64,000 nt of DNA from NCBI RefSeq assembly GCF_964204865.1, contig NC_135258.1, positions 17,422,001-17,486,000 of the forward strand, given 5' to 3'. Position numbers and translations under genes: made by a program. The notes under the pieces are model-generated. The model worked only from the letters and a program-made list of their open reading frames with translations, was not told where the DNA came from and searched no databases. Positions 25,444 through 43,400 of the stretch are shown piece after piece. This DNA comes from Styela clava. Its lineage: Eukaryota. How positions within the stretch are numbered: the first letter of the stretch is position 1; every line of letters begins with the position of its first letter.

Positions 25444-28400
25444 ATGAAAACAGGTGAGTAATACAATTTTTTTTTTCGATTTTCTGTTAAGAGCATGTGT
25501 TTTTAAAATATTTTTGTCACGTTTCAAATAAATTGAAAATACCCTCTTCGTGCTATTCAGATTCATTCAATATTTTCCCAAACTCTCATTACCTATAAAA
25601 TGTCTGCGTCTGTGAGTCTCGATATACTAGATGAAAATATGCACAAAATTTTTGGTATGTGATTAAAAGTGCCACCCGGTTATTATCTTATCTTGTTTTC
25701 GAAAATTAATATCGATAATTTGGCTTCAATCATAGGAAATATTTTTCCTTCATGAATTATTCTGTGATAACAAAACTGTTTGATTTCTAAAAAATACATT
25801 CATTATGCGACGTGTAAAATCACAATTGATTATGTGCTCATGTCAGTGTTGTGAACCTTCATAATTGGTTGTTCTTAAGTGACGAACAACTGCAAAATAT
25901 TTTTTCAGATCGGAGATTCAAGTATTTAATGAAAATTATTAGGATTGTGACTTTAATCATGTCCTGTGCAGTATTGAAATCAGTATTTGCTGCCTCGTCA
26001 GTGGAAAAATGTCGACAGAATAGTTCAGACACAAAATTTGCAAACAATGGGTAAGATTTGAAATATTATTTTTGTTACATATTTGTTATTTTTGAATCGA
26101 AGTGTCTGTGGATTGGAATTGTAAGAAACCAATTCTATTTCAAGTTATCGTGTATACACGGTTATCATTTGCTACATAGATGATGTTCTAGATAATATTA
26201 ATAAATTGAATGCAATTGTATGATTGTACAGGAATCACGCTAATTGTTGAGTCTGATGTTGAAAACTTATTCCATGCACCATGCTAAAAATAAATTGTTG
26301 GGCATATATGTAATTTTTATCGTATCAAATAGAAATTATGGCTCTTTTAATTTATTTTTTGGCTTCACAAAGTTTACAGACCAGACATTCCAAAATGGCT
26401 GACATTTAGAGGTGTTTGTCTAAGATGCCAAGATGGCTTCTTATATTATACAAATAAAAAATTTAATCTGAGAATGAAAAAATAGGTTTAAAACGAAATT
26501 AACTGTAACTTATATTTCACTACTAAAAAATTATCGTTTTTGTTTTATCATCCTTGGCGCCTTATGCGTTATAGGCGATCATATAAGTTATTTCATACCA
26601 GAAACATTTTGGCCTGTAATACTTTCACAAACACATACTAGTTTTCATAAATAATCCACTAACGATTTTTTCAAATATTCCGAATTTGAGATTATGTACG
26701 CAGAGGAGGAAATCGGCTTGTTTGAATCCGTGTGATTTTGTGTTTTTGTCGCGACGAATCGAATTCACTAATATCCTATCTCCAGAAGCAAGGTTTGTTA
26801 TAAGCCACACAATCGGGATGTATTTACATATTATAATGTCGCACGAGAAGTAGTTAAGTTTAATATTTGATGATTGTTTGTTTGTTTGTCCGTTTTTATC
26901 CGATGATTAGCCGGAAAACTAATCCCCACATCCATTGCTGTTTTGCTGTATAAAGATTGTTAATGAATGAAGTTAGAGGACGGAAAAAATACAGATTAGA
27001 AAAATCATATTATAGGGATTCCTGCAATCGAAGCATTTTAGTTTGTTCAAATTTTTTACACAATTATCACCTAAAGTTTACGTTATCCCATGAAAATTTA
27101 TACTTATCCGCGAATAAAACATGCAAATAGCAAATTTTCTTATTGTGCCATAGTTACTGTATTGCATTTTCCCCGGGAATTTGTGTGAAATGTAACAATT
27201 TAAGAGTATTACCTCTTATATGGTCAATGTTGAAGCAATGTGTTTTGAAAAAGTATTTTGAGCTGCGTGTCGAGTAATTGCACCCAAGAAAGCATTGATC
27301 TGATGTAGCTGAATCTAGAATTTAAATTATGGATAAGACTACTTGATGTATGACTATAAACGAGGTGTCATCAAACAACAGCGCATAATTTCAATCGTTA
27401 TATTAGCAATTTTTGCCAAATATAACCGCCGTACATGTTTTTGCTGACGCAATGAGTTGTCATGACACAATTCATTATGAATTCAACAGAAGACAAGATG
27501 TAAACAAATTTAGGGAACACTAACATTAGTGCCAAATCCATTTGTGTTTGATTTAAATAAGTTGAAGTCAAAAGTTTTTGTGGCTTAACTAGGAAAATTC
27601 CCTTTTCAAAATTCTTTTGTCATCAGAATACAAACATAAAGATTTATTAACATGAACATATCTACATTAAAATCGGTGTTGTTTTGTTTTTTGTCAGACA
27701 GTAGTTGCAAACCGTGAATTTTTAATAAAGTTTATAGATTCAAATTCTGTTCTGTTTAAAAATAAAATATTTTATTCCATCTTGTTAGTAATAGAATAAA
27801 ACCCAAACACATTATTTCTCATAGATTATCCATTCTGATTTTTTTTAAACGCATCTATATAATTGAGTAAATTTTGAATACCTCATCGCTCCCAAGATCG
27901 ACTGTTTAGGACTTTCCTACCAGATAGGAAGTGATAACGATAGTGCTTTCATTTTATCAAATGAGTCACAGGGCGCCAGATATGAGTGAGAGGAATAATT
28001 CAGATCCGTAAAACTGATGCATATTGCCAGGGTTCGTGACCCCACTTTCGACAGAAACATGCCGCTCTTCACACAAAATCTATACTTTAATTTTTTATTT
28101 CATTGCTCAATCAATCTACATTGTACTATTTTTTTCATTATTGCATTACCAGATACGAAGGACTTGTAGTTGTGGTTGGAGACGACATAGAACAAGACTA
28201 CAGTCTAATAGAAGACTTGCGCAAACTAATAACCGCAACTTCCGAAAAAATGTTTCAAGTTACCAAGTAAGAACACGAAAAAGCTTTTTCCGTATCCGCC
28301 ATTTTAGTTCATTCACTTCACGTTCATGGTTCAATGTTAGATATTCTGATCTACGGCATTTAAGGGTATTTTATAACCCAAGAAAAGTAAATTATATGAA

Positions 28401-31400
28401 TATTTTATATAAATTAGCTTTCTTTTTATTAAAGATGATATCAGTGCATGGATACTAGCGTATATTCACAAACATAACGTGGGGATCTATATAAAGTTAT
28501 GGCTGATACAGATAACAAAGCTATGTCAAAACTATTATTTGAGACTAGGGCCTGAAGCGAATTAGCATCTCTAATCGTACTGTTGAAACATTTTTTGAAT
28601 ATTTTCACAGGCGTCGAGCATATATTCGACAAGTTTCTGTTTTGTTACCTCGATCGTGGGGTGTTCCTCCAAAAGAATTTGAGAATATCATGAGTGTCAA
28701 AACTGACACAGTTCATACAGTGGATAGAGGAGATTTTAGGCTACGCAATCGATCTCCGAGGTAAATCAATGATATAATCAATCATGAGTCAGCTGCTGAA
28801 ATCTTCTCTCATTTGAGGTGTTTTCCAAAGAATTGATTCAAATTAAATTATTTAAATCAGAAAATTACAACTCCCTTTTTTACAATCACATGTCTTATTT
28901 TTGATGAACGAGTCAAATATTGTTATTGCAATAAATTCAAATATTTAGGCAAATTAAATAGTTTGAATAACATTGTACTATATGCCAATTCAGCCACGAA
29001 GGAAAATGATTGTCAATTTCAATAAAATTTAGTTGAATTATATTCAAATGCAGGTCAGATAATGAAGACATTTCTTGGCAACTGGGCGATGAGGAGGCAC
29101 AAGTTGACATGCCATATGTTATCAAACCGACACCATGTGGATACTCAGGTCGATATCTCCGATTGACCCCAGAATTTGTGAGGTTTGGCGGAAAGGCATC
29201 GGAAATGGGCAAGATGGGATCGCCCGAAAAAATCTTAGTCAGACAATGGGCTAAATTACGTTGGGGAGTGTATGATGAAATTCCTCTCGACGACTCAGAG
29301 TCGAACTTTTATAGACACACCGACTTAGAGGTTCATCCGATTGCTTGCTCGGCTGCTATTACAGGTTAGTTTGAAATACATCATATTGACTCATTATGAG
29401 GTTGATTTAAATAACTGTCTTCGAAAAGAACATGTACTTGTCGTTGCCGTGTTTAAAGAGTCGTTAATAGTACTGGATAAAATACTTTATGGGTTATAAC
29501 GTAGGAGTAATTATTGAGAAAATGACTCCAGCACAGATCTAACGACAACAGCAATCGTCGTTAATTACACATAACTACGCAAATTTCGCCATGCCATGTG
29601 AAATGCATACATGCTACTTTGAAATGCAATTATCCCTCGCTATTCCCCTTTGTCTGTCTCTTTGTAGTGACCAAAACAACGCTGATACGATTATCGTGTA
29701 GGTAACCCTATGTTTCGCGGAACCACCTTTTGGTGTGACACTGTTTGAACCATATTCGTCGTGAATCTGGTTTATTATTGGTAAATAAAAGTGGATATCA
29801 CCACGGAAACACACCTATATCTTGCAAATCAGATGCAAGGACTTTTAGCTATATAAATTATGTATATGTTTAAGGGCCGATACGAATTACACAAACTTTG
29901 TCTGCAAGTAAATATTCCGGATGGACGAAATATAACACTTTTGATGCTACATCAACATGCACAATACAATTTTTTCATATCACTCATGTAAAACAAAAAC
30001 GGTTCATTTTATCGCCAATCGAGTAGAATCTAACAAAATATTTTTACAATTTTCTCCAATTGCAGGAAATGAGCCAAAAAGTGGCTAATTATTCGAAAAA
30101 CCACAAATATAAGAAATTTATTTTAATTATTAAAGCACTTCACTGCAATGTAGTCGGGTAACTTATCATTATATAAGGAAAACAATTTTGAAGAATATTT
30201 TCAATAAGCAATATACTTAATTTCCGGGTTAAAACTCATTATAAACGTTCAATAACTCGTTTCTAATGATTACAAATTTATTTTTAATCTAATGAATTTA
30301 AAAATATTAATCATTTCAGTTTGGAAGATATTTTAGAAAAGTAATACATATAATGGTTTCACTAGTTTACCTCAAAACGAAAATTAGTTTTTTATGTTTC
30401 AAAATGAAAAATTGCCAGCTGGCATAAATATTTTAGCGTTTGTTCCATGTTGCAATTTAACGAAAACGACATCAGACTTTTAAGATATGGACCCGACAAC
30501 ATATTTCTGTGCGAAAGAAATTAATATTTAATTACGTTTCAGGTAAAATAATAAAATCGGACAATCCGGAAGTACCGTGTAGTAAAGAGGAAGCTCTTGT
30601 AAACAAGAATTGTACATTTAAGCCTGACTCTACGCCGTCGAAGACTGTAACTTCCAGAAAAACTTCTTTTGATGAAACCGTCGGAATTACAGGATTCGCC
30701 TCATTAATGTACAGGTACAAGAAATATAGCTGCGTGGGAAGTGTACTAAATAAAAGTCGATATTAAATCGTAATGACTACATTATGCAATAATGTTATCT
30801 CAACTATTTTCTCGGTAAATCAGGATGTGTAACTGCGCAAATGTTGATACCATAAGTATTATTTTGTGTGAATTTCACATTTCACACAAAATTTTGTTTA
30901 CAGTGCATGAGTTGGCCTAGTATGGCACTGATATAGACTTTGTTGACATCGCAGGTTCTAAGTTCAATTCCCATGCCCACGTTATCGTCCAGTGGTGTAA
31001 TAAATTAAGCACCAGCATTCGATGCTTTTAAAAAGGGCTTGTTTGGGGTGACAGGCGTATGAAACGTCGTAAATAATATAATGCGTTTAGTCGATACGAT
31101 ATATATTTTCTATTTCAGTCCTGATTTGAGTTACGTCGATCATTTCTGTGACACTGTAGAAGAATCAGAACAAGAAGTGCCCGAAGAACAACAGCATAAT
31201 GCAGAAGCACCCACGTTACATAATTTGCATTGTCAAGGTAGGCTAAGATACTTTGTTTTATTTCGCCTATGCAACGGACCTGGTGTTTGGTTTAGTGTGC
31301 GTCAATTTGTTCCTGATAGAGTTCAAACCGAATTTTCTTCAAACCCTCCTGATGGAAATTAGAACTTATCAGCTTTCTTGAAGCGTTCCTGAGTCGTAGT

Positions 31401-34400
31401 AAAAGCTGATCCGAACCAACAGTCTGTGCTAATTTTTTTTTATCAATTTATGCTTTTTACAGGAAAAAGTGTATGGGAAGTAATAAGAACTCATCCAGAC
31501 TTTGCGAACGGAAATAACCCCCCACTTCCAGAAAGTTCTATTCCTCCACCGATTGAATTCAGCCTATTAAAAAATCCGGACAGGTACTGAAATAAAAAAT
31601 TCAAAAATACCACGGAGTTCTGCTTTGGTCTCATTTTGAATCCAAATTGAAAACTAACACAGACAATACAAATATTTCTCAAAGCGCGTTGGGCTGTACG
31701 GGTTACTTCATCAAAAGCAATTCGTGCCTATTTACTATAAATGTTCAAATTTATATTTCAAACTATAGACGTATGGCTGCCTGATTTTGATTTGTATCGG
31801 TGGGAAACTTATTTGCTCGATGTTAATTTAAATTTTTTTAAATTAAACTAACTGTAACATAAATTCGAATAAATGTCAGAAAGTTTCGACCATACAGATA
31901 AAATAAGTTTATTTATCTAAAGTTAATTAATAAAATGTATTCTGCCAACAATTTATTTATACACCAATTCTAAACGTATTATGATGATCAGCAATATAAA
32001 AACGTATATACTCACGTTTATGTAGAGTAAAAACTGTTAGTATCCGGTATTTTAATTATGATTTTTTGTGTCATTTCTAGGAGGATTGTTCTCGTTCTCG
32101 ACATTTCGTCCAGTATGAAGTTTTTCAATCGAATGAAATTGATGAGACAAGCAGCAAGTCAATTCATTGATACCGTACCGGAAAACTCTTGGATCGGGAT
32201 TGTTACATTTGCAGCGTAAGTTAGTAATGAAATAATAATCAACAACAAATTTTCAATATAGTATGCCATTCGAAAGGTATATCCTTTATAAAGTACACTT
32301 CAAACAATATCAAATTATCTCTTTTAGAGAAGGAACGGTGATGTCAGAACTCATCAGAGTTTCATCAAACGACGTGAGAAGGTTATTAAAAGAACGTCTT
32401 CCCAATTTTCTTGTCCCCGGTGAGTATGCGCGATTAGATATTTTTTAAATTTATTTCTCCAGTATGTGGTTGATGCATTTATGAGTGTATCATTGTTCTA
32501 CATTTATTGTCTAAAAAATTTCAATCATTTCCCGTGTAGAATGTTATAAATGTATTCATAACAGTTCCAATCTCCGTACCAAAAGTAATGAAATTGAAAT
32601 AATGAAATGAAAGTAATTCTTTTATAATATCTAATGTAAAATCTACGACGGCAAATATCTCTTGTTAGGGGCAAAAAAAATTTAGAATCGCGATATTTAA
32701 CAACACTGAAATTAGTAAAAACGCATTACGATTGCGAAAAGACATTCATTACTAAAACGAATAGGCGCTAATTAGATACTGAAATTACCAAAGGGTTTGA
32801 AAAGACTCTAATTCTAAAATAAAACATTATTTACTTGCAGGGACCAGTATCGGTAGCGGTATTAAACTTGCACTGCAAGTTTTAAAATCATCTGGTCCAA
32901 AGCATATGAGAAAATCGGGTGGAAGTATGCTTGTTTTGAGTGATGGAAAAGAACACAACAGTCCAAAGATCAATGACACATTGTTGGAAGTAAAAAAAAT
33001 TATTATCTCCTAGTACAGAAAAATACAAACTCCTTGCATGGTTTATAATACGAAGGATGTATCTTTAATTTAATGTACAATAAATTTTTAAATCTGCTGC
33101 TAATTGTCATCGTTTTTGAAATATTTAATTTTATAATCCAGGTTATTGATTTTGGAGTTCGCGTTACAACAATTGCTTTTGGTGCACAAGTAGCAGACGA
33201 TTTGGATGTTTTAGCCGAAGTGACTGGAGGTTCTGCATATTTTGCGAGCTCAGGGGAGTTTAGCGACAATAGTGAGTTACGTGATGCATTCCTGGCAACG
33301 ATTGACAATCCAGAAGGTAAACTCCCAGCAAAAATTCTTTATGCAGATTGATTTTGAGCGATTATCTTAGTACAATCAATTCATATGAAGATATTGAGTA
33401 CAGGCGACGCATTTTTAAAAAATATATGATATATTACAAAAAATAAAATAATGGCAAGTGAAAAAACTCTAAGTCGTATGAGATCATTAGCGTATCTGGA
33501 GTTTATACACTTATCGTATATTTTCAGGTGTCGCTGGTAAATATCGAAATCATTAGATATATAATGGATGCAGGCTCAAAATTAATTTTATAAAGTAAAA
33601 TAATAATATATTAATGTGCAATATATAGTAACCTAGTGTCCCAGTTCATAGCTAAATTTATTTTAAATTTACCAAGAGTTCAAAAAAAAACTAGTTGTTC
33701 AATCTAATTAGCTTTAGAATTTATTTGCAGATGACATGGTTGTTGTTTCAAGTCAGTCGATACGATTGAAAGCTAATTCGTCCGAAGGTCACACTTTCAT
33801 TATAGATGAAACAATCGGAAGAGAAACTAGGATTACAGTGCTTTACACCGACACCGTAGCACCTAAGGTAAATAGTAGAAATGGTGATGAAAAATGAATT
33901 GTGAATTTCACAATTACTAGTCTTTGCTACTTTCTATACCAAGTTTCACCCAGAACAAGGCCATGTGCAAGTATACACTGCCACATAAGAGGCTACTATT
34001 TTTTATTGAAGTGTCGTAATTTTTACGGTTCAGGATTATCTTTTCAATTTATTACACTCTGGGCGAAGTGTTATCCATGGTTCATTTTAACAGTTTTGTC
34101 CGACAAAGAAGAGATTCGTTTCTGTGATATTAAGCATGCATACGAATATTCAAATTCAATCTTTCTCCAAAGTATATTTTTACTTATTTATTACCATTTG
34201 TGAGAAATTATTATTTTTAATCTAAAAAGGAAGTTACTATATATTATAATGATGAATATTTTAAGATCGGACTGGAAAATCCTTGGGGTGATGTAATGTG
34301 GGAAGACGATGATATGTTTGATACGAACATTACAGCTGAGTTTTCTTCAGATGAAAATTTTTCAACAAAGACCATTCAATACTTTGGATACATGGAGGTA

Positions 34401-37400
34401 AAATATAGTTCGCAGTCAAAATAATAAATAATAATAGTGAACATTTTATTAAAAATTAGATTTTGCTAAATCTGCCTTATATAATCCCTGTTATTTGACT
34501 CCTTTTTTTCTTGTTCAACTAAAATTCTTTGAAAGCGTTGTGTTTTGTGCATTTACACTGCAACTAAACTTATTTTGGTAAGAAAAATTTTAAGTAATTA
34601 CTATTTACCTCACTCCATATAAATTTAATTTGGTCGAATTGAATTCTTAATCACGTACTTAACTAAACCTTCGAATAATATTCATAAACGTAGTAATTTC
34701 AACTCTTATATCATTGTATTAAAAACGAATGAGTATCTGGCAAAATTCTCAATCAATTACTTTTTGGTATATCCGTAACAAAATAACCGAAAAAATTGTC
34801 GTAGAGCGAAGTATACTTATTCAGTGTCGAGAGATAATTAAATTTGTGGATGAAATTTGAGTTTACCAAAAAGGAAGTAGAAATATATTTTGTGGGGAAT
34901 ACCTAGCATTTTAAATATTCCACATGTCAAACACGGTCACTGTTTTCAATTGGTTTAGTGCATTTCATTAATAATTTTCGTGTTTGAGTGCTGAACCGCA
35001 TGAAATTTTAATGCCTGTGCTATCTAAGCACAAATCCTATACAACAAGAATGATTTTAGTCATACATTATTTGTTTTCAAATGTACATGTAAAATATTCA
35101 TGAACAAAAATTAATGAGAAACAAAATTTAATACAAAAACAATCATTAAAAAAAGCAACAATAGTGAAGCACGGATATTTATATTTTAGCCTGGAACGTG
35201 GACGCTTCTGTTGAAAAACCAGAGGTTGCAAAACAGTGTTACTGCTGACATCTCGGTTTTCTCCCATCCCGCAGAAGAACAGGAAAGTTTGGTTCTCTCA
35301 CCAGCATTACTTTGTAGGATAATAAATTACAGTGGAAGCGAAAGCATTGTCATTTATGCACATCTGAGTTATGGTAATCCATTAAATTAATTGTAATAAA
35401 CTTTTGCTTCATGTTACGTTATTGAGGTCAGTTTGCAATGCTGTTTTTTTATTCATCGAAAACGAAAACTACCATCCTGTAGCATTATTAGCTGACGTAG
35501 CCGTTACTTTCTACTGTCAGCTAAACAGTTAGTTTGGCAGTTTTTAGTGCTGTCAGTTATTTGCTATTGTCTTCAATTATATGTTGTTCATTTACACAAT
35601 TAGTTTTGGTATCGGTGGATCAACTCACAAACTGAAAGAGCAAAATATTTTACCTGTTGAATCGGTTCTTATCACTCTTATTGCTTTTATTAGAAAACTC
35701 CCCGGACTGTACTGTGCCAAGCAAGCATGCGCCAAAGTTTTATTTGTGCCTCAATTGTTCTCACCATTTTTCAGGTGAGTTTGCTGTTCTCGATGCAACA
35801 GTGGAAGCTGTTGTGACTCGGCCTTTATCACTGTCTGGCAGTTATGATACGGCCACCGTTGAATTGAAGGACGATGGTCGTGGTGCTGATGTTATTGCAA
35901 ATGATGGAATATATTCAGGATATTTTACTAGATTCACATTGCAAGGAAGATACAACGTCAAGGTAACTTTAAACATTGAGTACATTGTCCACCATAAATA
36001 ATCTGTTAATCTTATTATATTACGTTGTAATCATACTGCAGCAATCGTCCCTCGCATTTTAACCCCAGTAAGACTCACGCGCAGAAGATGTTTTCCCAAG
36101 CAACTCATTCTCGTGATTTGTAGGATACCCATCGCATAGCACTTTTATACATATGACAGTATCTTTTTGGATTATTTTGTAATCAAAATGTCATTCATGT
36201 GCATGTGGCTAATCTACAAATTGTTTTACAACCTGGATTTGTCAACGCAGTTGAGCGTAGTCACTAATCAAAGTCCATCCAGGCTTGCTATGTTTTTGAT
36301 ATAATTCTCTCTGATCTCAGTGCCAATTGTAATTATCTTTTTTATTTTTGGATTAAAGGTTAATGCCGCCGGAGACGGAGATAAGGCGCGACTTGACATT
36401 AATCATATTCTTGGTCTGGGACGTCGTAAAAATGACTTGGTCAAAGTTGATACAAAAGATGTTTTACAAAATATGGGGAACAAAGAAGAGAATAAGTATG
36501 TCTACGATTATATGCGTGAATCACTGAATTCAGTCTTATTCTGAAATGCATCATTTGGTCTCTCTATTTATGTATCTTAATAATTAAATTATTTTTTCAC
36601 CAAAAGACGGAAATCCAGAAAACGACGCTCAATCAGAGGAATAACGAGTAGGATGGGAAAACTGAAAGCTTTCAAACGATGGAGCACACAACAGAAAGAA
36701 TTCATCGTAAATGACACAACTGCTGTAGTTTGTCCAGATGGGTAAGATTTATACTAATTCGAACTAAGATTTTGGGACCGTACAAACATTTGAAATTATT
36801 TATCAAACAAAAAAGCAAAACTTATTGCTTTATATTTTGAATGAATCGGATATCGAGACGGTGCCTTGTGAGACTATAGAAGAGTCCCACCCAATCTGTG
36901 GCGCATACCTAGAGGGAAATTGCCAAATCAAACATTTCTCGCAAATTAATATTTGCATTGCGTATAATAAGTTGATATTTCTGTAAAATGGGAGAAATTG
37001 ACTGTATGTTATTCTATCGGACAAAGAAGCAAATCGTCCCTAGAATTATTTTTGTATTATTTCGGTGCGATACGTATACAAGTTTATCGAATCAATACAA
37101 TAAGCATACATACCGAAGCAGCCATAAAAGTATGGCAACTAACAAGAATACCTTGAAAAAAAAATTACTATTTTATAATATTTAATATATTCAGATATTA
37201 CCACTTTCAAGACAGTTGCTATAAGTTTGTCCGAACTCCAATGGCATCATTCACTGATGCATCGAAATTTTGTGCAAATGACGGCGGATACCTCGCACAC
37301 GTGAATTCAAATCAAGAACTTTTATATATAATGGACACCATTGGAAAAAAAGATACATGGTTCGGAGGAATTCATCAAGTGGGTTATAACTTATAAAACA

Positions 37401-40400
37401 ACAAAGTAATTTTCGTATTTTTATGCATATATTTATCTTTTATCCTTCATACTTTTATTCACTTCTACAGTCGCTGAACAGAGATGACATATCAGTTGAG
37501 TTTGTAACAAAACGCATTAAAAGAGGACACGAAGATGAAGATCTAGTTGTATTGGCAAATTTATTCAACGAAATTTACCTCAATGAAGATACCAGAAAAA
37601 TAATTGAATCATTTGAACCAGATTTAGCTGGATTAAGCAGAAAAGAGATTAACAAGTATGGAAAGAAGTGAAAGTAACTTTTATCAATAACATTTTCAAA
37701 TTACAATCAAAGTAAAATAATGTTGTCGACGCATCAGTGGTAAACTCGCAGATTCAAAATATCAGTTACAATCCCTATTTACACCCCATTATCAGGATGT
37801 AATAAATTGAGTAAGCTACTCTTAACAGGAAACATCAAAGTCCTTCCACAAAAAGTAACTCCCTGAATATTAGTGTTTAGTTTTTGTATGTAGCCTTTTT
37901 CAGATCATACGTGGTCCAAATGGCTCAGTAGTAGTAATTTCCAATTTTTTCTGTCATTTTTATCAATTCTTAGATTTATAATGCTATGCGCTCGACTTAT
38001 ATAGTTTATTTATACATTTAAAGGATTATTCGAGTACTGGGAGGAACATCAGAATCTGACATTCCTTTACTGAAAGAAGCAAAATTACTGAGACTACAAA
38101 ATGTCCAAGATATGTTGACGACAGCAAGTATGCGCACTCGTACTACACAACACATGACAACAGTGAGGATACATACTATTTAAGATTGCTAATTAAACTG
38201 ACAAAACTGACTGACCTTCAATTTTTGAATTAAATGGAATATTCCAATTTCAAACATTGACCTTTTACACTATGAATGTCCCTGGGTTTCTCAGACTTTC
38301 GTTATCCGTGGCCTTCGGAAGACTCTCGAGACATGTGGCCGCATGTTTTTCTATAAAAATCAGTCGTTCTATGTGCTACATTCAATAATACGAAAACAAA
38401 ACAGGTTAACGCGAATGAATAAATGCATTACAATAAAAGAATCAACGTGAACTGCCTTCAAATTAACGAAGTTAGTGTAAATATTACCTAGTGAACAACT
38501 TTGCTAGTGGCACCCAAATAACCACTCCGTGCTTATGCTTATAATGTAACAGAGGAGCTGAATATGTATTACAACTTGAACTGTCATGAAAAATGCTTTT
38601 TACTTTATCTAATATAACGTCAGGAATAATATTGGCTATCATAAAATATATATTTATATATATATACATATTAGAGCTACATTTTGGTGTTAATATTTTG
38701 CTATTTTTCTGACACCGTTCACCAGACAAATCACAGCCACATTCACTTTGTTGTCTGCGGGGAATTTAACTATATTCTGCGTTTAGACTGTAAGTTCGAG
38801 GAATCGACGACAAGCTGGAACTCCACCATCATCAAGTGGTGATTCTAGCGAACCATCAACAGGCGTATTTACAACGATAGCAACATCCACTGAAAATGCA
38901 ACACTCGCACTTGCAAAGAAATACCCAGATGTAATTAATTTTAGTTGATGAAAACTTTTTTATTTTTAAATGAATTGCTAGTGGTATTTTTTTATCAAAA
39001 AAACTCAATTATATTATTTACTGTATGTCTTGTTTGTATGTTCATTCGTAACTATTGCTGAGATGAACAATAATTTTGAAACAGATGAATGAAAACACGG
39101 AGTGTGTTACTTGAAATGCACACCGCTGTAATTCAAATCGAACGAATAAAAATACCAACAACTTTATCACTAAAAACTCATTGAATTTAGCAAAAAGACT
39201 ACTTTGGAAGTGGAGAACAGGATCCAGAATGCTCATGGTTTAACGATGGTAAAGTAGTTGAAACGTCAGGCGATGAAGTTTGCAACAGGGACAAGGCTTT
39301 CTTTTGTGAAAGACCAAGTATGAATATGAAAATATAAATGGTTTATTGTATTATATTGACTTGTTTGATGCATAACACATCAACCAAACTAAAAAACATT
39401 TATGAAACAGCGGCTTGGTGGGTTATCCATATCTCAGCACATGCTTTGCTCAATTATTGCGAACAAATATACTTTATTAAAACAATATTAAATCTTAGAG
39501 AGTATGAAGCTAATTCACAAAGAAAATCTCGATAACTTCAAAGCAAAAAATGCATGCGAAGGCAGCACTCACACAATATACGGATATGGGTTGAATTGCT
39601 CATAAAAGTTTTAACTCAAACAATTGTTCTTCTTCATTGCAGCATTCGCATGTTTTCGTATGTGTAATATTTAATTTAAGACTTTGAGAAGTTGAACGGT
39701 TTATTCCAAGATAAGAAATTATATATATATTTGGGTTGTCCATTCGCAGTTTAGAAAAAGAAACCAACCAAATCTTTATCATTCCAGAGATCGATCTTTT
39801 TGAACCTTCACGCATCACTGATTTGAAAGTCAAAGTTACTGAAGATCTCAATATTGTTCGACTTGTATGGACGGCCACAGGCGATGACAAGACTAATGGA
39901 AGAGGTACGTTATAATATATTTTTGTAATCTAATTTTGACCATTGGGAGACCAGTTGCCAATTTCAATCTTGAACTAAACGATATAATGAAGTATCAAGA
40001 TGAAGCCACCATTTTACTCCATTAGTAGCAAGTTTAATGACCTTAGTCAACAACGGTTCTAGGAAAATTCGCCGTAGGAAATCTTCCCGCAGAAAATTTC
40101 GCCGCATAGGAAAAATCGCAAGGGTATTTTTCTGTAAAACAAGTATTTGTGATAAAAACAGTTTTTAAAGTATCTTTTTATTAAAAAAGATTCGTTATTT
40201 AAAAGCATACCGTAACCCTGCGGCGAAATTTTCTGCGGCGAATTTTACGGGCACAGGCAACAACAGCTAGATTAACCTAAAGCATGCATTAGAAATGTTA
40301 GTCCCGTTTCACTTTCACCTGTATAGAATACAGCTATTTCTAAATCTCGAAGCAGATTGTCGTGTGATTTAAAATGCGGAACAAGTATAGATATGTAATT

Positions 40401-43400
40401 CTGTCAACATTCTTCTTCTTTACATTCAGCGAAAGAATATGAAATACGCAATCTTAGAACGAAGCGAGCTCGAAAGCTTGCAAGGAATTTCAAAGACGGT
40501 GAATTATTGAGCTTCGCTGCAATATTAAATGGAAGTGTCGATGTTGCCAAAATCTCGGGAGAACGTGAAGAATTAGTCGTCAATTTAACAGAAATTACAG
40601 GTTGGACTTTTTTTTATATCGAGATGGGAAATTTAAATTCTATAATGTTTTGTTTAATTGTAATTTAATTTATTCGATAACAAAAAAATGGAAGTATGAA
40701 AGAGATTTTCATCGAAAACACATATGATCAACTCAGAAATCCGAAGCTTTGTTTGTCTTTAATATATTTCTAACGTAAAGGTGACGCATTACTTTTAAAT
40801 TTTTTTTTTTTACAAATATTTGACACACATTAGGAATTTCAAATTGAAAAATCATTAATGTCGATAAAGCAAAAGTTAAATTTTTTTCTCCCAATCAGGT
40901 TGCCCACCACATGCTGCACTGGACCTAATAATTCTCCTACCTCGCCGAATACTTTCTCCGAGTTCCACATCACGAATCGAAAAAGAATCAACTTTGGATT
41001 TATTCAGAACTTTATTTTCCATCTTCAAAATCAGTAAGTAAAGACTCAAACTAAGACTTGCACCTACCATGATTATTAAGCCTAAGACAGTAAACCCCAT
41101 GAATGTGAAAATTTCTACACTTGAAAAATATCTTCGGGCTGAACCTCGTCCAACTCAGATTGATTTCTTTTACTTGAGCTTTTTGCTTTAAGTGAATTTA
41201 ATGGGAATTAATAAATAATTTGTCCGACAGGTACATATGAAGTACAAGTGAGCGTTGTTGCTATACAAGATCAACTTGGGAGAGTTCTTCTGCGTGATTC
41301 TACTAGTGCCAATGAAGTTCTGAACAGTATTAGGCAGGGATTAGAACAAGACAACAGACTCAGACAGGAAGTCAGATACCGTAAGTAAAAACATATATAT
41401 TGCTATGAACAAAGCCGTAATATACCAACGAGTGAAGCACATGTTTTTGTGCTTTACCGTAACTAAAGATCGTTCATTGTTTCCATTCGATATACTTTCT
41501 AAATATCTAACCCTGTTTACCCTTCTGAATATCTAACCTTGTTTCCATTCGATATACTTTCTAAGTATCTAACCCAGTCTATCTTTTTAAATATCTAACC
41601 CTGTTTATTTCAGATGACACTGTAAAAATATTAGAAGATATGAAATCAAGGGGAAGATCGATCACACCAAAAATTTTATTATCTATATTGACGGAAGAAG
41701 ATATGGAAGAGTTGATAACATATGAAAACACCACTGATATGTTCAAAATTATCGTTGGTGTTGGAATTGCAAATGAAAGGTAATTTTTGTACATCTGCAA
41801 TGATAATTTTAATCATTTTTAGGTTTGCAGTGTAATAAATTGCGCAAGAATTACAGTCAAAGCTAAATGTACTTGATGAAGTTATTTAGAGTCGGTTTTG
41901 CCGGTGAGTGATGTTAGTTAATCCAGCGACCGCACAAGCAGTCACGAACACCTTGCGCGACATGACATGACGTTCTGCGGAGCAATGTGGAGAGATTTCG
42001 AAAATCAATTTAACAAGGGGAGGAATTGGTGCATATATGACTCAAATTAAAATATTGAGATAATTCTTTATACAGTATCCACCATAGGTAACTGATCTCT
42101 TGTATGTTTGTTCCATTTTAAAACTGCAGTGCTGCGTTTAGTTCATCAACTTGCGCCATTTTCATTGTGTTGATTCCTTCATCTATAAGCCAAGCAATTA
42201 GAAAATCGAAATCAGTATTTTTATTCTTTTGATTTACAGCTGCTGTTTTGAGTTGGTAGGTAAAATATTTATTTTTCAACAGTGACGTTCGCGCCGTAGT
42301 TTCAGATCCGCCATGTGAAAATGCAATATTTGCTTCAACGTGGAAAAACTTGAATGAAACGTATCGTGAAGTCGCATCTCAGCTGTGTTATGCAAGAAAT
42401 GATGAATATCAGGTCAGATCCTATCGAAATTAAAAAACAATTTTTTTAATGAAAGTAGTAATAATAACTTCTCATTAAAGAATTTTATAAATAATTATAA
42501 CGGATAAATTGCTAAGAACAGCACATATCAATACTGTTACTAATAATCTATTACGAGAATTATCTGGAATCAAATATACTTGCTAGGATTTTATTCAAAA
42601 TTTTCAATCATGTCGCATCTGATTTGTTGTAGGGCAAAAATCTGACACTATTAGAAAAGTTGTTTCCGTATTTTCAGGCTTGGGGCATTGTTGCTGTTGA
42701 CGAAGGAGGTTTACGCAGTGAGCCTAGCAATATTGTATCAAACATAATTCACAACCATCGGAAATTGGTTGATTGTCCACCAGAGCCAGAATTAGTAAGT
42801 ATATTCGAAATAATAATTTTAGATTTAGCTAACACTTGTGACACTCAGACAACTATGGTATCAGTCATGCTTTTCAACGCCCATCTCTATCGTTACAGCC
42901 TCAACCCAGCGTTGCAGGAATCGATGTTACAGTCGTAACCATTGCAATTACAATACCTCTTGCTGCCATTCTTGGTATCGTTGGCGCAGTTATATGCTTT
43001 GGTCAAGTGAAAAAATACAGAAAAAAGAAGAGAGAAAAAAAGGAGAGAAAGGAACGTGAAGCGGAAGAAGCGGTTAGTTACTTTAAATTTCTTCTTTTCA
43101 AATATCAATAAACATAAGCATATAAAAACTTCGATAGTAGAAAAATCTAGCGCAGTAAAATTACGTTAAATTTCCAATCTACACCGCTTAATATCCCTTA
43201 CTATTTCTAATAAGAATTGAACTGGAAACTGAATTCCCACAACGAATTATAATATATTTCAGTATAAGTGGCACTAATGTGTATATCCCCATTAAATGAA
43301 CAATAACATAATTTACCTTCCGTACACGATTTGCTTATGTTTTCATGTCTGCTTGGAGATTTTGTCATGTTATTGTATATATATATAAATACCCACAGGC

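What the first reader, a model, noticed from the sequence alone, without database searches (positions are those of the whole stretch)
29241..36628. CLCA that appears to have swapped self-cleavage for furin processing: HExxH lost, RKRR gained in the cleavage linker
Seen: the catalytic segment reads ILV-RQWAK-LRWGVYDE (29241-29255). Known: CLCAs have FV-HEWAH-LRWGVFDE, a zinc-metalloprotease motif needed for self-cleavage in the linker between GRY.VKV and F.R....F.V, just before FN3. Both His ligands and the catalytic Glu are replaced while the flanks and the VWA MIDAS (DISSS/T/LSDG) are conserved, which argues for a maintained pseudoenzyme rather than decay. Seen: that same linker now reads NKRKSRKRR|SIRG (RKRR at 36617-36628), an optimal proprotein-convertase site. 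Inference: maturation has been outsourced to furin or a trypsin-like enzyme.
Basis: partly seen in the sequence, partly recalled or inferred. Interest (0 to 1): 0.88.

Follow-up and report, generated by a model that had tools for sequence, protein, structure and literature searches.

The report
Dead CLCA protease with convertase site
A sea-squirt gene of the CLCA family has lost the zinc-binding residues it would need to cut itself. Like its relatives in two other sea-squirt genera, it keeps a furin-type cutting signal in the linker where CLCA proteins are normally cut, so another enzyme probably does the cutting; a strict evolutionary "swap" is not shown.

Summary
RQWAK sits at 29241-29255, in the HExxH slot of a Pfam CLCA_N exon. 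RKRR sits at 36617-36628, in the linker between the GRY..V.V and F.R motifs. The gene is real: it has at least 24 GT..AG exons, an open frame, and spliced transcript contigs in four runs that all include the RKRR exon. It is the ortholog of the uncharacterized Ciona LOC100182654 and Clavelina LOC143459166.

All of these ascidian orthologs lack both zinc-binding His residues (R-E/Q-W-A-K). All keep R-x-R-R-S as the only contiguous invariant block of a linker that is otherwise about 30% identical. Two more conserved convertase sites lie further downstream. The dead protease domain is about as conserved (51% identity to Ciona) as the VWA domain (56%).

Cutting by a proprotein convertase is the best reading, but it is an inference. 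The "swap" is only partly supported:
- Substituted HExxH in CLCA_N was already described (Lenart 2013).
- The loss is older than the site: the dead sister protein P0023 has no such site.
- A second dead paralog in this genome (QQWAH) has none.
- A sea-urchin relative with intact HExxH carries the same kind of site.
- Family-wide, 9/22 dead versus 4/62 intact proteins have a site, but there are too few independent contrasts to test this.

The parts
28154..41033 (+). Modelled part of the gene: 24 exons, 1217 codons, open frame. The 5' exon(s) with the signal peptide and the 3' exons out to the TM exon near 42842-43108 are not resolved.
   Evidence: Exon chain from ortholog-guided junction search. 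Eleven exons and ten junctions between 34266 and 39904 come directly from spliced RNA contigs. All introns are GT..AG (the last-but-one acceptor was corrected).
29054..29364 (+). Exon for the core of the metallohydrolase (CLCA_N) domain
   Evidence: Pfam PF08434 E 1.8e-16. 51% identical to Ciona and 50% to Clavelina.
29241..29255 (+). RQWAK in the HExxH slot: Zn ligand His156->Arg, catalytic Glu157->Gln, Zn ligand His160->Lys (human CLCA1 numbering)
   Evidence: Ligand identities are taken from bioRxiv 10.1101/2025.10.18.683246.
29256..29279 (+). LRWGVYDE: the Gly-turn and the retained third-ligand Asp (Asp167 equivalent)
32100..32114 (+). VWA MIDAS D-x-S-x-S (DISSS)
35775..35962 (+). Exon ending in the GRYNVKV motif (end of the beta-sheet-rich domain)
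   Evidence: 61% identical to Ciona
36359..36495 (+). First linker exon. It holds the conserved invertebrate loop motif I-L-G-L-G at 36407-36421.
36607..36741 (+). Second linker exon: basic cluster, RKRR, then the F.R strand motif (36671-36703). It is 135 nt long, so it is in-frame if skipped, but no skipping was seen.
   Evidence: Included in the transcript contigs of all four runs
36617..36628 (+). R-K-R-R, predicted proprotein-convertase site; the predicted scissile bond is after 36628 (Arg|Ser)
   Evidence: Aligned R-x-R-R-S is invariant in Ciona (two forms) and Clavelina
37513..37524 (+). Second conserved convertase-type site, R-I-K-R|G, at the start of the insert in the C-type lectin domain
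38799..38810 (+). Third conserved convertase-type site, R-N-R-R|Q, at the end of that insert

Best explanation
The locus is an intact, transcribed ascidian gene for a large type-I membrane glycoprotein of the CLCA family. Its domain order is dead metallohydrolase, VWA, beta-sheet-rich domain, linker, split C-type lectin, FN3-like, second VWA, TM. It belongs to an old branch of CLCA homologs in which two of the three zinc ligands of the metzincin site are replaced by Arg and Lys; here the catalytic Glu is also Gln. It therefore cannot cut itself by zinc catalysis. The folded domain is nevertheless kept, presumably as a scaffold or binding module, and the Arg/Lys may pair with the retained Asp in place of the metal (inference). 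In the inter-domain linker, where vertebrate CLCAs are cut, all ascidian orthologs keep R-x-R-R|S. The most likely mechanism is that a furin-type proprotein convertase in the secretory pathway cuts there. This would separate the N-terminal dead-MH/VWA/BSR part from the membrane-anchored C-terminal part. Two further conserved convertase sites would excise an insert from the lectin domain. Shown: sequence, exon structure, expression, orthology, loss of the ligands, conservation of the sites, presence of convertase genes. Inferred: the cleavage, the enzyme, the consequence.
For: The motifs and coordinates are as read and the exon is CLCA_N. Spliced GT..AG contigs in four runs include exon 36607-36741, and the contigs reach 1.8-1.9 kb upstream of 34262, which fits the 1674 nt of predicted upstream exons. 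Variants in those contigs affect about 8 codons synonymously and 2 non-synonymously. The orthologs are Ciona LOC100182654 and Clavelina LOC143459166, with slots REWAK and linkers S-R-K-R-R-S, S-R-E-R-R-S and A-R-K-R-R-S. In the four-way alignment only 12 of 66 linker columns are invariant, and R, R, R, S form the only contiguous block. Identity to Ciona is 51% for the MH core, 56% for VWA and 30% for the linker. WIN (the model of this window's gene) branches outside Ciona+Clavelina with 100* support, so the site is shared across a deep ascidian split. Five of five assessable HExxH-intact paralogs here have short linkers with no R.[KR]R. At least five convertase P-domain loci are present in the genome. 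Family-wide, 9 of 22 substituted proteins versus 4 of 62 intact ones have R.[KR]R in the linker, including an independent echinoid dead clade in which 3 of 3 have it.
Against: No cleavage data exist. No structure was made, so exposure of the site rests only on composition (73% polar or charged residues, net charge +10). The linker is so basic that 25% of its own shuffles contain the motif. Dead relatives without a site exist: P0023, several crustacean proteins, and the QQWAH paralog of this genome. Intact relatives with a site also exist: Diadema P0069, a chiton, a lobster, a skink. The phylogenetically independent contrasts are too few (4-5; sign test p about 1). The 5' exon with the signal peptide was not resolved.
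Confidence: 0.6

Rival explanations
1. Strong form of the reader's idea. Loss of HExxH and gain of RKRR were one coupled, compensatory event, and this coupling is a general rule of CLCA evolution.
For: The raw association is 9/22 versus 4/62 (Fisher 5e-4, not corrected for phylogeny). Independent dead lineages carry sites: ascidians, echinoids, Penaeus and one Watersipora protein.
Against: The sister protein P0023 is dead and has no R.[KR]R anywhere. The QQWAH paralog of this genome is dead and has no site. Diadema P0069 has an intact HEWGH together with the same R-S-R-R-S as its dead sisters, so in that lineage the site came first or is independent of the loss. The independent-pairs test has no power.
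Confidence: 0.2
2. The linker is cut, but by an active CLCA paralog in trans or by an extracellular trypsin-like protease. In this reading the basic residues serve as the P1 side of a CLCA-type site.
For: CLCA cleavage is intermolecular: a catalytically dead CLCA2 mutant is cut by co-expressed wild type (PMC10669480). Most CLCAs have a basic residue at P1 of the autocleavage site (bioRxiv 10.1101/2025.10.18.683246). This genome holds about ten HExxH-intact paralogs.
Against: The conserved pattern is the full four-residue R-x-[KR]-R followed by Ser, which fits the convertase consensus rather than a single basic P1. Two more sites of the same pattern are conserved elsewhere in the protein, away from any CLCA cleavage loop. 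The intact paralogs' own linkers have no comparable basic motif.
Confidence: 0.12
3. The basic cluster is not a cleavage site. It is a conserved charged patch, for example for binding glycosaminoglycans or another ligand, and the protein stays in one chain.
For: The local sequence is polybasic beyond the motif (net charge +10 over 45 residues). Several dead CLCAs have no site at all.
Against: Outside the four or five motif residues the basic character is not conserved: the Ciona and Clavelina flanks are neutral. What is conserved is exactly the convertase consensus plus the P1' Ser, three times in one protein.
Confidence: 0.1
4. The copy is a decaying pseudogene and RQWAK is part of the decay.
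For: Three catalytic positions are changed, and here Glu is also Gln.
Against: The frame is open over 1217 codons with canonical introns. Spliced transcripts are present in four runs. Transcript variants are mostly synonymous. Orthologs with the same substitutions exist in other genera, and MH-domain identity equals that of other domains.
Confidence: 0.01

Closest known systems
Ciona intestinalis LOC100182654 (XP_018672742.1) and Clavelina lepadiformis LOC143459166, both annotated 'uncharacterized protein'
   Same: They share the same domain order over the whole length, the same replaced zinc ligands (R-E-W-A-K), and the same three R-x-[KR]-R sites. Identity is 49-50% over about 620-640 aligned columns.
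   Different: This copy also has Gln for the catalytic Glu, a somewhat longer and more basic linker, and a shorter Ser/Thr-rich stretch.
Vertebrate CLCA1/CLCA2/CLCA4, self-cleaving zinc metzincins
   Same: Shared features are the CLCA_N fold signature (Gly-turn, third-ligand Asp, Met of the Met-turn), a VWA domain with a complete MIDAS, the GRY..V.V and F.R motifs, an FN3-like domain, and a C-terminal TM as in CLCA2.
   Different: There is no HExxH, so no zinc catalysis. There is no A-x-Y-I-P-G-type self-cleavage motif. The protein has a convertase-type site instead, plus an added split C-type lectin domain and a second VWA domain.
CLCA_N proteins with substituted active sites (Lenart, Dudkiewicz, Grynberg, Pawlowski 2013, PMC3650047)
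   Same: The substitution pattern is exactly the one described there: first His to Arg, second His to Lys, Glu to Gln. That paper reports 28% of the family without HExxH and several independent losses.
   Different: In the term search of that paper 'cleavage site', Ciona, tunicates and lectin did not occur; its full text was not read. The conserved linker site is not described in any paper found.
Echinoid substituted CLCAs (S. purpuratus XP_011663926 and P0175, Diadema P0174) and their intact sister P0069
   Same: They have replaced zinc ligands plus R-x-[KR]-R|S about 12-13 residues before the F.R motif.
   Different: They are an independent lineage in the tree, have no lectin insert, and their HExxH-intact sister already has the site.

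Membership tests
CLCA family (CLCA_N-containing proteins) | N-terminal CLCA_N / metallohydrolase domain (Pfam PF08434) | tested here: met
   Exon 29037-29366 scores E 1.8e-16, 60.9 bits against a cut-off of 25.6. Weaker exon hits lie at 28091-28267 and 31063-31359.
CLCA family (CLCA_N-containing proteins) | VWA domain with complete MIDAS (D-x-S-x-S, T, D) | tested here: met
   VWA_2/VWA hits. DISSS, G-T-S and S-D-G are present in the joined reading.
CLCA family (CLCA_N-containing proteins) | GRY..V.V and F.R..S.G.F motifs flanking an inter-domain linker, followed by an FN3-like domain | tested here: met
   GRYNVKV, F-K-R-W-S..., and P-S-R-I-T-D-L ... T-A-T-G-D-D. A lectin domain is inserted before the FN3-like domain.
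Catalytically active, self-cleaving CLCA metzincins | HExxH with both His zinc ligands and the catalytic Glu | tested here: not met
   RQWAK. The orthologs read REWAK.
Catalytically active, self-cleaving CLCA metzincins | Third zinc ligand Asp after the Gly-turn, and a Met-turn | tested here: met
   Y-D-E is retained, and the Met of A-S-L-M-Y is retained. This is not sufficient without the two His.
Substituted-site CLCA_N subgroup (Lenart 2013) | CLCA_N fold with non-random replacement of the His ligands by Arg/Lys | tested here: met
   H1->R and H5->K. In the trees this protein groups with 13 other substituted proteins, with support 96* and then 89.
Proprotein-convertase (furin-type) substrate | R-x-[KR]-R motif, conserved in orthologs | tested here: met
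   R-K-R-R|S here, with R-K-R-R|S, R-E-R-R|S and R-K-R-R|S in the orthologs.
Proprotein-convertase (furin-type) substrate | Protein passes through the secretory pathway, with the site on the luminal/extracellular side | tested here: inconclusive
   A C-terminal TM segment and extracellular-type domains place the linker outside the cell. The signal-peptide exon of this gene was not resolved.
Proprotein-convertase (furin-type) substrate | Site lies in an exposed, flexible segment | not tested
   Only composition was examined. No fold was made: the joined model has no reference and the orthologs exceed 1200 residues.
Proprotein-convertase (furin-type) substrate | Convertase present in the organism | tested here: met
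   PF01483 P-domain matches over the cut-off at several loci.
Proprotein-convertase (furin-type) substrate | Actual cleavage after the motif | not testable with these tools
   This needs protein chemistry.

The most novel reading that the evidence does not exclude
In CLCA-type proteins, what is conserved is cleavage of the inter-domain linker, not catalysis. Lineages that acquire a convertase site in the linker are then free to lose the zinc site; Diadema P0069, with both features, would be the intermediate state. Ascidians took this furthest, turning an already dead, lectin-bearing CLCA into a precursor cut at three convertase sites, one pair of which excises an insert from inside a lectin domain.
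Probability: 0.25. Interest if true: 0.65.

Novelty: new variant of a known kind. Interest (0 to 1): 0.45.

Why it matters
In vertebrate CLCAs, self-cleavage and the protease activity are entangled. It is hard to tell whether cutting the linker matters in itself (release of an inhibitory segment, exposure of the VWA domain) or is a by-product of an enzyme that has other substrates. A natural family member that has given up catalysis yet keeps a dedicated cutting signal in the same linker would show that the cut itself is the selected feature. It would also give a simple system for testing this, because the site can be mutated or the convertase inhibited without touching an active site. In addition, it gives a first functional handle on an uncharacterized gene that is conserved in three ascidian lineages.

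Tried and rejected
- Pseudogene or decay: rejected. The frame is open, transcripts are spliced, and the gene is conserved.
- Nuclear-localisation signal: rejected. The CLCA2 NLS lies in the cytoplasmic tail (PMC11007793), whereas this cluster is on the extracellular side.
- Solved structures: the MH exon has no sequence match in the PDB.
- The search for homologous proteins with P0023 and with P0156 added few relatives. P0023's source organism stays unknown.
- Phylogenetic co-occurrence test: only 4-5 independent contrasts, no power.
- dN/dS on the dead domain: not done. Only protein sequences of the orthologs were available, and at about 50% identity synonymous sites would be saturated. Per-domain identity and transcript polymorphism were used instead.
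- One MAFFT run on the full-length proteins timed out. Sequences trimmed to 930 residues around the slot were used instead.
- The joined exon model was used only inside scripts, to align it with fetched proteins. It was not sent to any search, family, fold or complex tool; those searches were done exon by exon, by reference.
- No structure or complex prediction was run.
Full report
**What is in the sequence**

The window is AT-rich eukaryotic DNA (GC about 0.33). It corresponds to G000:C10:17422001-17486000 of a 377-Mb genome. At 29232-29279 the + strand reads I-L-V-R-Q-W-A-K-L-R-W-G-V-Y-D-E, and RQWAK is exactly at 29241-29255. At 36617-36628 it reads R-K-R-R, followed by S-I-R-G.

Exon-sized open stretches were scanned one by one, by reference. 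The stretch 29037-29366 matches Pfam CLCA (PF08434) at E 1.8e-16. The stretches 32031-32216 and 32801-33010 match VWA, and 37157-37393 matches a C-type lectin.

**Gene model and expression**

Ortholog-guided junction search and spliced transcript contigs together give 24 exons from 28154 to 41033. All introns are GT..AG, and the frame is open over 1217 codons.

Contigs of four runs from one study were laid on 34000-39950. They show ten GT..AG joints and eleven exons, including 36359-36495 and 36607-36741. No joint skips the RKRR exon, and no variant falls in 36617-36628.

The runs are labelled only "RNA?", but contigs that lack introns with GT..AG ends are transcripts. These contigs carry 1.8-1.9 kb upstream of 34262, while the predicted upstream exons sum to 1674 nt. 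The runs hold 0.20-0.21 of the sampled words of 28000-37900, about what the predicted exons would give.

Variants between the contigs and the genome affect about eight codons synonymously and two non-synonymously (one loose-end variant was re-read by hand as synonymous).

The first exon(s) with the signal peptide and the last exons were not resolved. A candidate upstream exon ends at 27985, and a TM segment followed by a basic tail lies at 42842-43108.

The joined model was used only inside scripts. It was not sent to any search or folding tool.

**What the gene is**

An exhaustive profile search with the MH exon found a 1602-residue Ciona intestinalis protein (LOC100182654, "uncharacterized") as the best full-length hit. 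A word search added a second Ciona form and Clavelina lepadiformis LOC143459166.

tblastn of the Ciona protein against the window matches exon after exon along the whole gene. The window therefore comes from an ascidian, and the gene is the ortholog of these proteins. In the trees the window protein branches outside Ciona+Clavelina (100*).

**The dead active site**

According to the CLCA1 cryo-EM preprint, zinc is held by His156, His160 and Asp167, with Glu157 as the catalytic base. Here the equivalents are Arg, Lys and Asp, with Gln for the Glu. The orthologs read R-E-W-A-K or R-E-W-S-K.

Ten other CLCA loci in this genome keep HEW[AG]H at the slot. So the replacement is real and specific to this copy.

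The domain is not decaying. The MH core exon is 51% identical to Ciona. For comparison, VWA is 56%, the beta-sheet-rich domain 43% and the linker 30%.

This kind of substitution is already described. Lenart et al. 2013 (PMC3650047) report that 28% of CLCA_N domains lack HExxH, that H1->R and H5->K are the typical changes, and that there were several independent losses. In the term search of that paper, 'cleavage site', Ciona, tunicates and lectin did not occur.

**The linker site**

Between GRYNVKV and the F.R motif the four ascidian sequences share only 12 invariant columns of 66. R, R, R, S form the only contiguous block. The sites are:
- S-R-K-R-R|S in this window
- S-R-K-R-R|S and S-R-E-R-R|S in Ciona
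- A-R-K-R-R|S in Clavelina

Two more R-x-[KR]-R sites are conserved in all four sequences, at 37513-37524 and 38799-38810. They flank an insert inside the lectin domain.

The genome has several proprotein-convertase P-domain loci.

The motif lies about 30 residues downstream of I-L-G-L-G (36407-36421). That loop motif is shared with many HExxH-intact invertebrate CLCAs. The site therefore sits in a lineage-specific extension of the linker, not at the old loop itself.

**Is it a swap?**

*Within this genome.* Five of five assessable HExxH-intact paralogs have short linkers with no R.[KR]R. However, a second, independently dead paralog has none either. It reads QQWAH and lies at C19, about 11.977 Mb (L038:1435).

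*Across the family.* 84 proteins were aligned around the slot and the linker. R.[KR]R occurs in the linker of 9 of 22 substituted proteins and 4 of 62 intact ones. Fisher's test gives 5e-4, but this is not corrected for relatedness.

*The tree.*
- The ascidian group is sister (99*) to P0023, an unnamed marine protein. P0023 is also dead (KEWAK) and also carries a lectin domain, but has no R.[KR]R anywhere.
- Both sit in an all-substituted clade with crustacean proteins (support 96*, then 89 after adding rows). Only some of those crustacean proteins have a site.
- The zinc ligands were therefore lost before the ascidian sites arose.

*Sea urchins.* An independent dead clade (slots RSWSY, RTWGY, REWGR) has R-x-[KR]-R|S in all three members. 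But its sister, Diadema P0069, keeps HEWGH and has the same R-S-R-R|S at the same distance from GRY.

*Power.* The paired-contrast test finds only 4-5 independent contrasts and has no power.

*Conclusion.* Convertase sites are commoner in dead CLCAs and are strongly conserved in the ascidian orthologs. The two traits are neither necessary nor sufficient for each other, and their order differs between lineages.

**Mechanism**

The best-supported reading (about 0.6) is that a furin-type convertase cuts after R-K-R-R in the secretory pathway. This would separate the dead-MH/VWA/BSR part from the membrane-anchored part, as one of three convertase cuts.

The rivals are:
- Cutting in trans by one of the active paralogs. 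CLCA cleavage is intermolecular (PMC10669480), and most CLCAs have a basic P1.
- A conserved basic patch that is not cut.

A nuclear-localisation role is topologically implausible, because the CLCA2 NLS is in the cytoplasmic tail.

**Novelty**

No paper found links CLCA proteins with convertase processing, or treats the ascidian gene. The pseudoenzyme part is known. New here are the conserved linker site, and the three-site precursor. Both are hypotheses that still need protein chemistry.

**Limits**

- No structure prediction was made. The orthologs exceed 1200 residues and the joined model has no reference.
- No dN/dS was computed.
- One alignment run timed out.
- The RNA evidence is from assembled contigs of one study. 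Rare isoforms that skip the 135-nt exon, which would stay in frame, cannot be excluded.

Noticed in passing
window 37513-37524 and 38799-38810: Two further R-x-[KR]-R sites (R-I-K-R|G and R-N-R-R|Q) are conserved in Ciona and Clavelina. They bracket an insert of about 100 residues that splits the C-type lectin domain, so the protein looks like a precursor cut at three sites.
   Followed up: partly
L038:1435 (G000:C19, about 11,977,400, + strand): A second dead CLCA paralog reads QQWAH in the HExxH slot and lies inside the C19 cluster of active paralogs. It has a TM tail, and its linker has no basic motif. It is an in-genome counter-example to 'dead implies furin site'. Compare earlier notes s1-815959 and s1-815933.
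   Followed up: partly
G000:C9 (7.19, 7.69, 7.72, 7.73, 12.52 Mb), C19 (11.97, 11.99, 12.02, 12.03 Mb), C17 (12.52 Mb): About ten HExxH-intact CLCA paralogs sit in tandem clusters. The C19 pair at 12.02 and 12.03 Mb have nearly identical linkers, which points to a recent duplication.
   Followed up: partly
protein P0023 (ENA contig of 5.4 kb, organism unknown): A 1160-residue CLCA-like protein with KEWAK and a C-type lectin domain after the F.R motif is sister to the ascidian group. It has no R.[KR]R motif in its whole length. The uninterrupted ORF suggests a transcript or an intron-poor genome.
   Followed up: partly
protein P0069 (Diadema antillarum XP_071510784.1): This sea-urchin CLCA has an intact HEWGH and an R-S-R-R|S linker site, and it is sister to three dead sea-urchin CLCAs with the same kind of site. 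It may represent an intermediate state.
   Followed up: partly
window 36407-36421: The linker motif I-L-G-L-G is shared by the dead ascidian proteins and many HExxH-intact invertebrate CLCAs ([IV][LV]GxG). It may be the invertebrate counterpart of the loop that occupies the active-site cleft in CLCA1.
   Followed up: no
window 27867-27985 and 28060-28166: The 5' end of the gene is unresolved. A candidate exon ends with a good donor at 27985, in the right phase, but has no Met. An ATG at 28060 opens a hydrophobic reading in another frame that ends in a stop.
   Followed up: partly
window 42842-43108: A predicted TM segment is followed by a polybasic K/R/E-rich cytoplasmic stretch, also present in Ciona. 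It resembles the position of the reported NLS in the CLCA2 tail.
   Followed up: no
   Followed up: no
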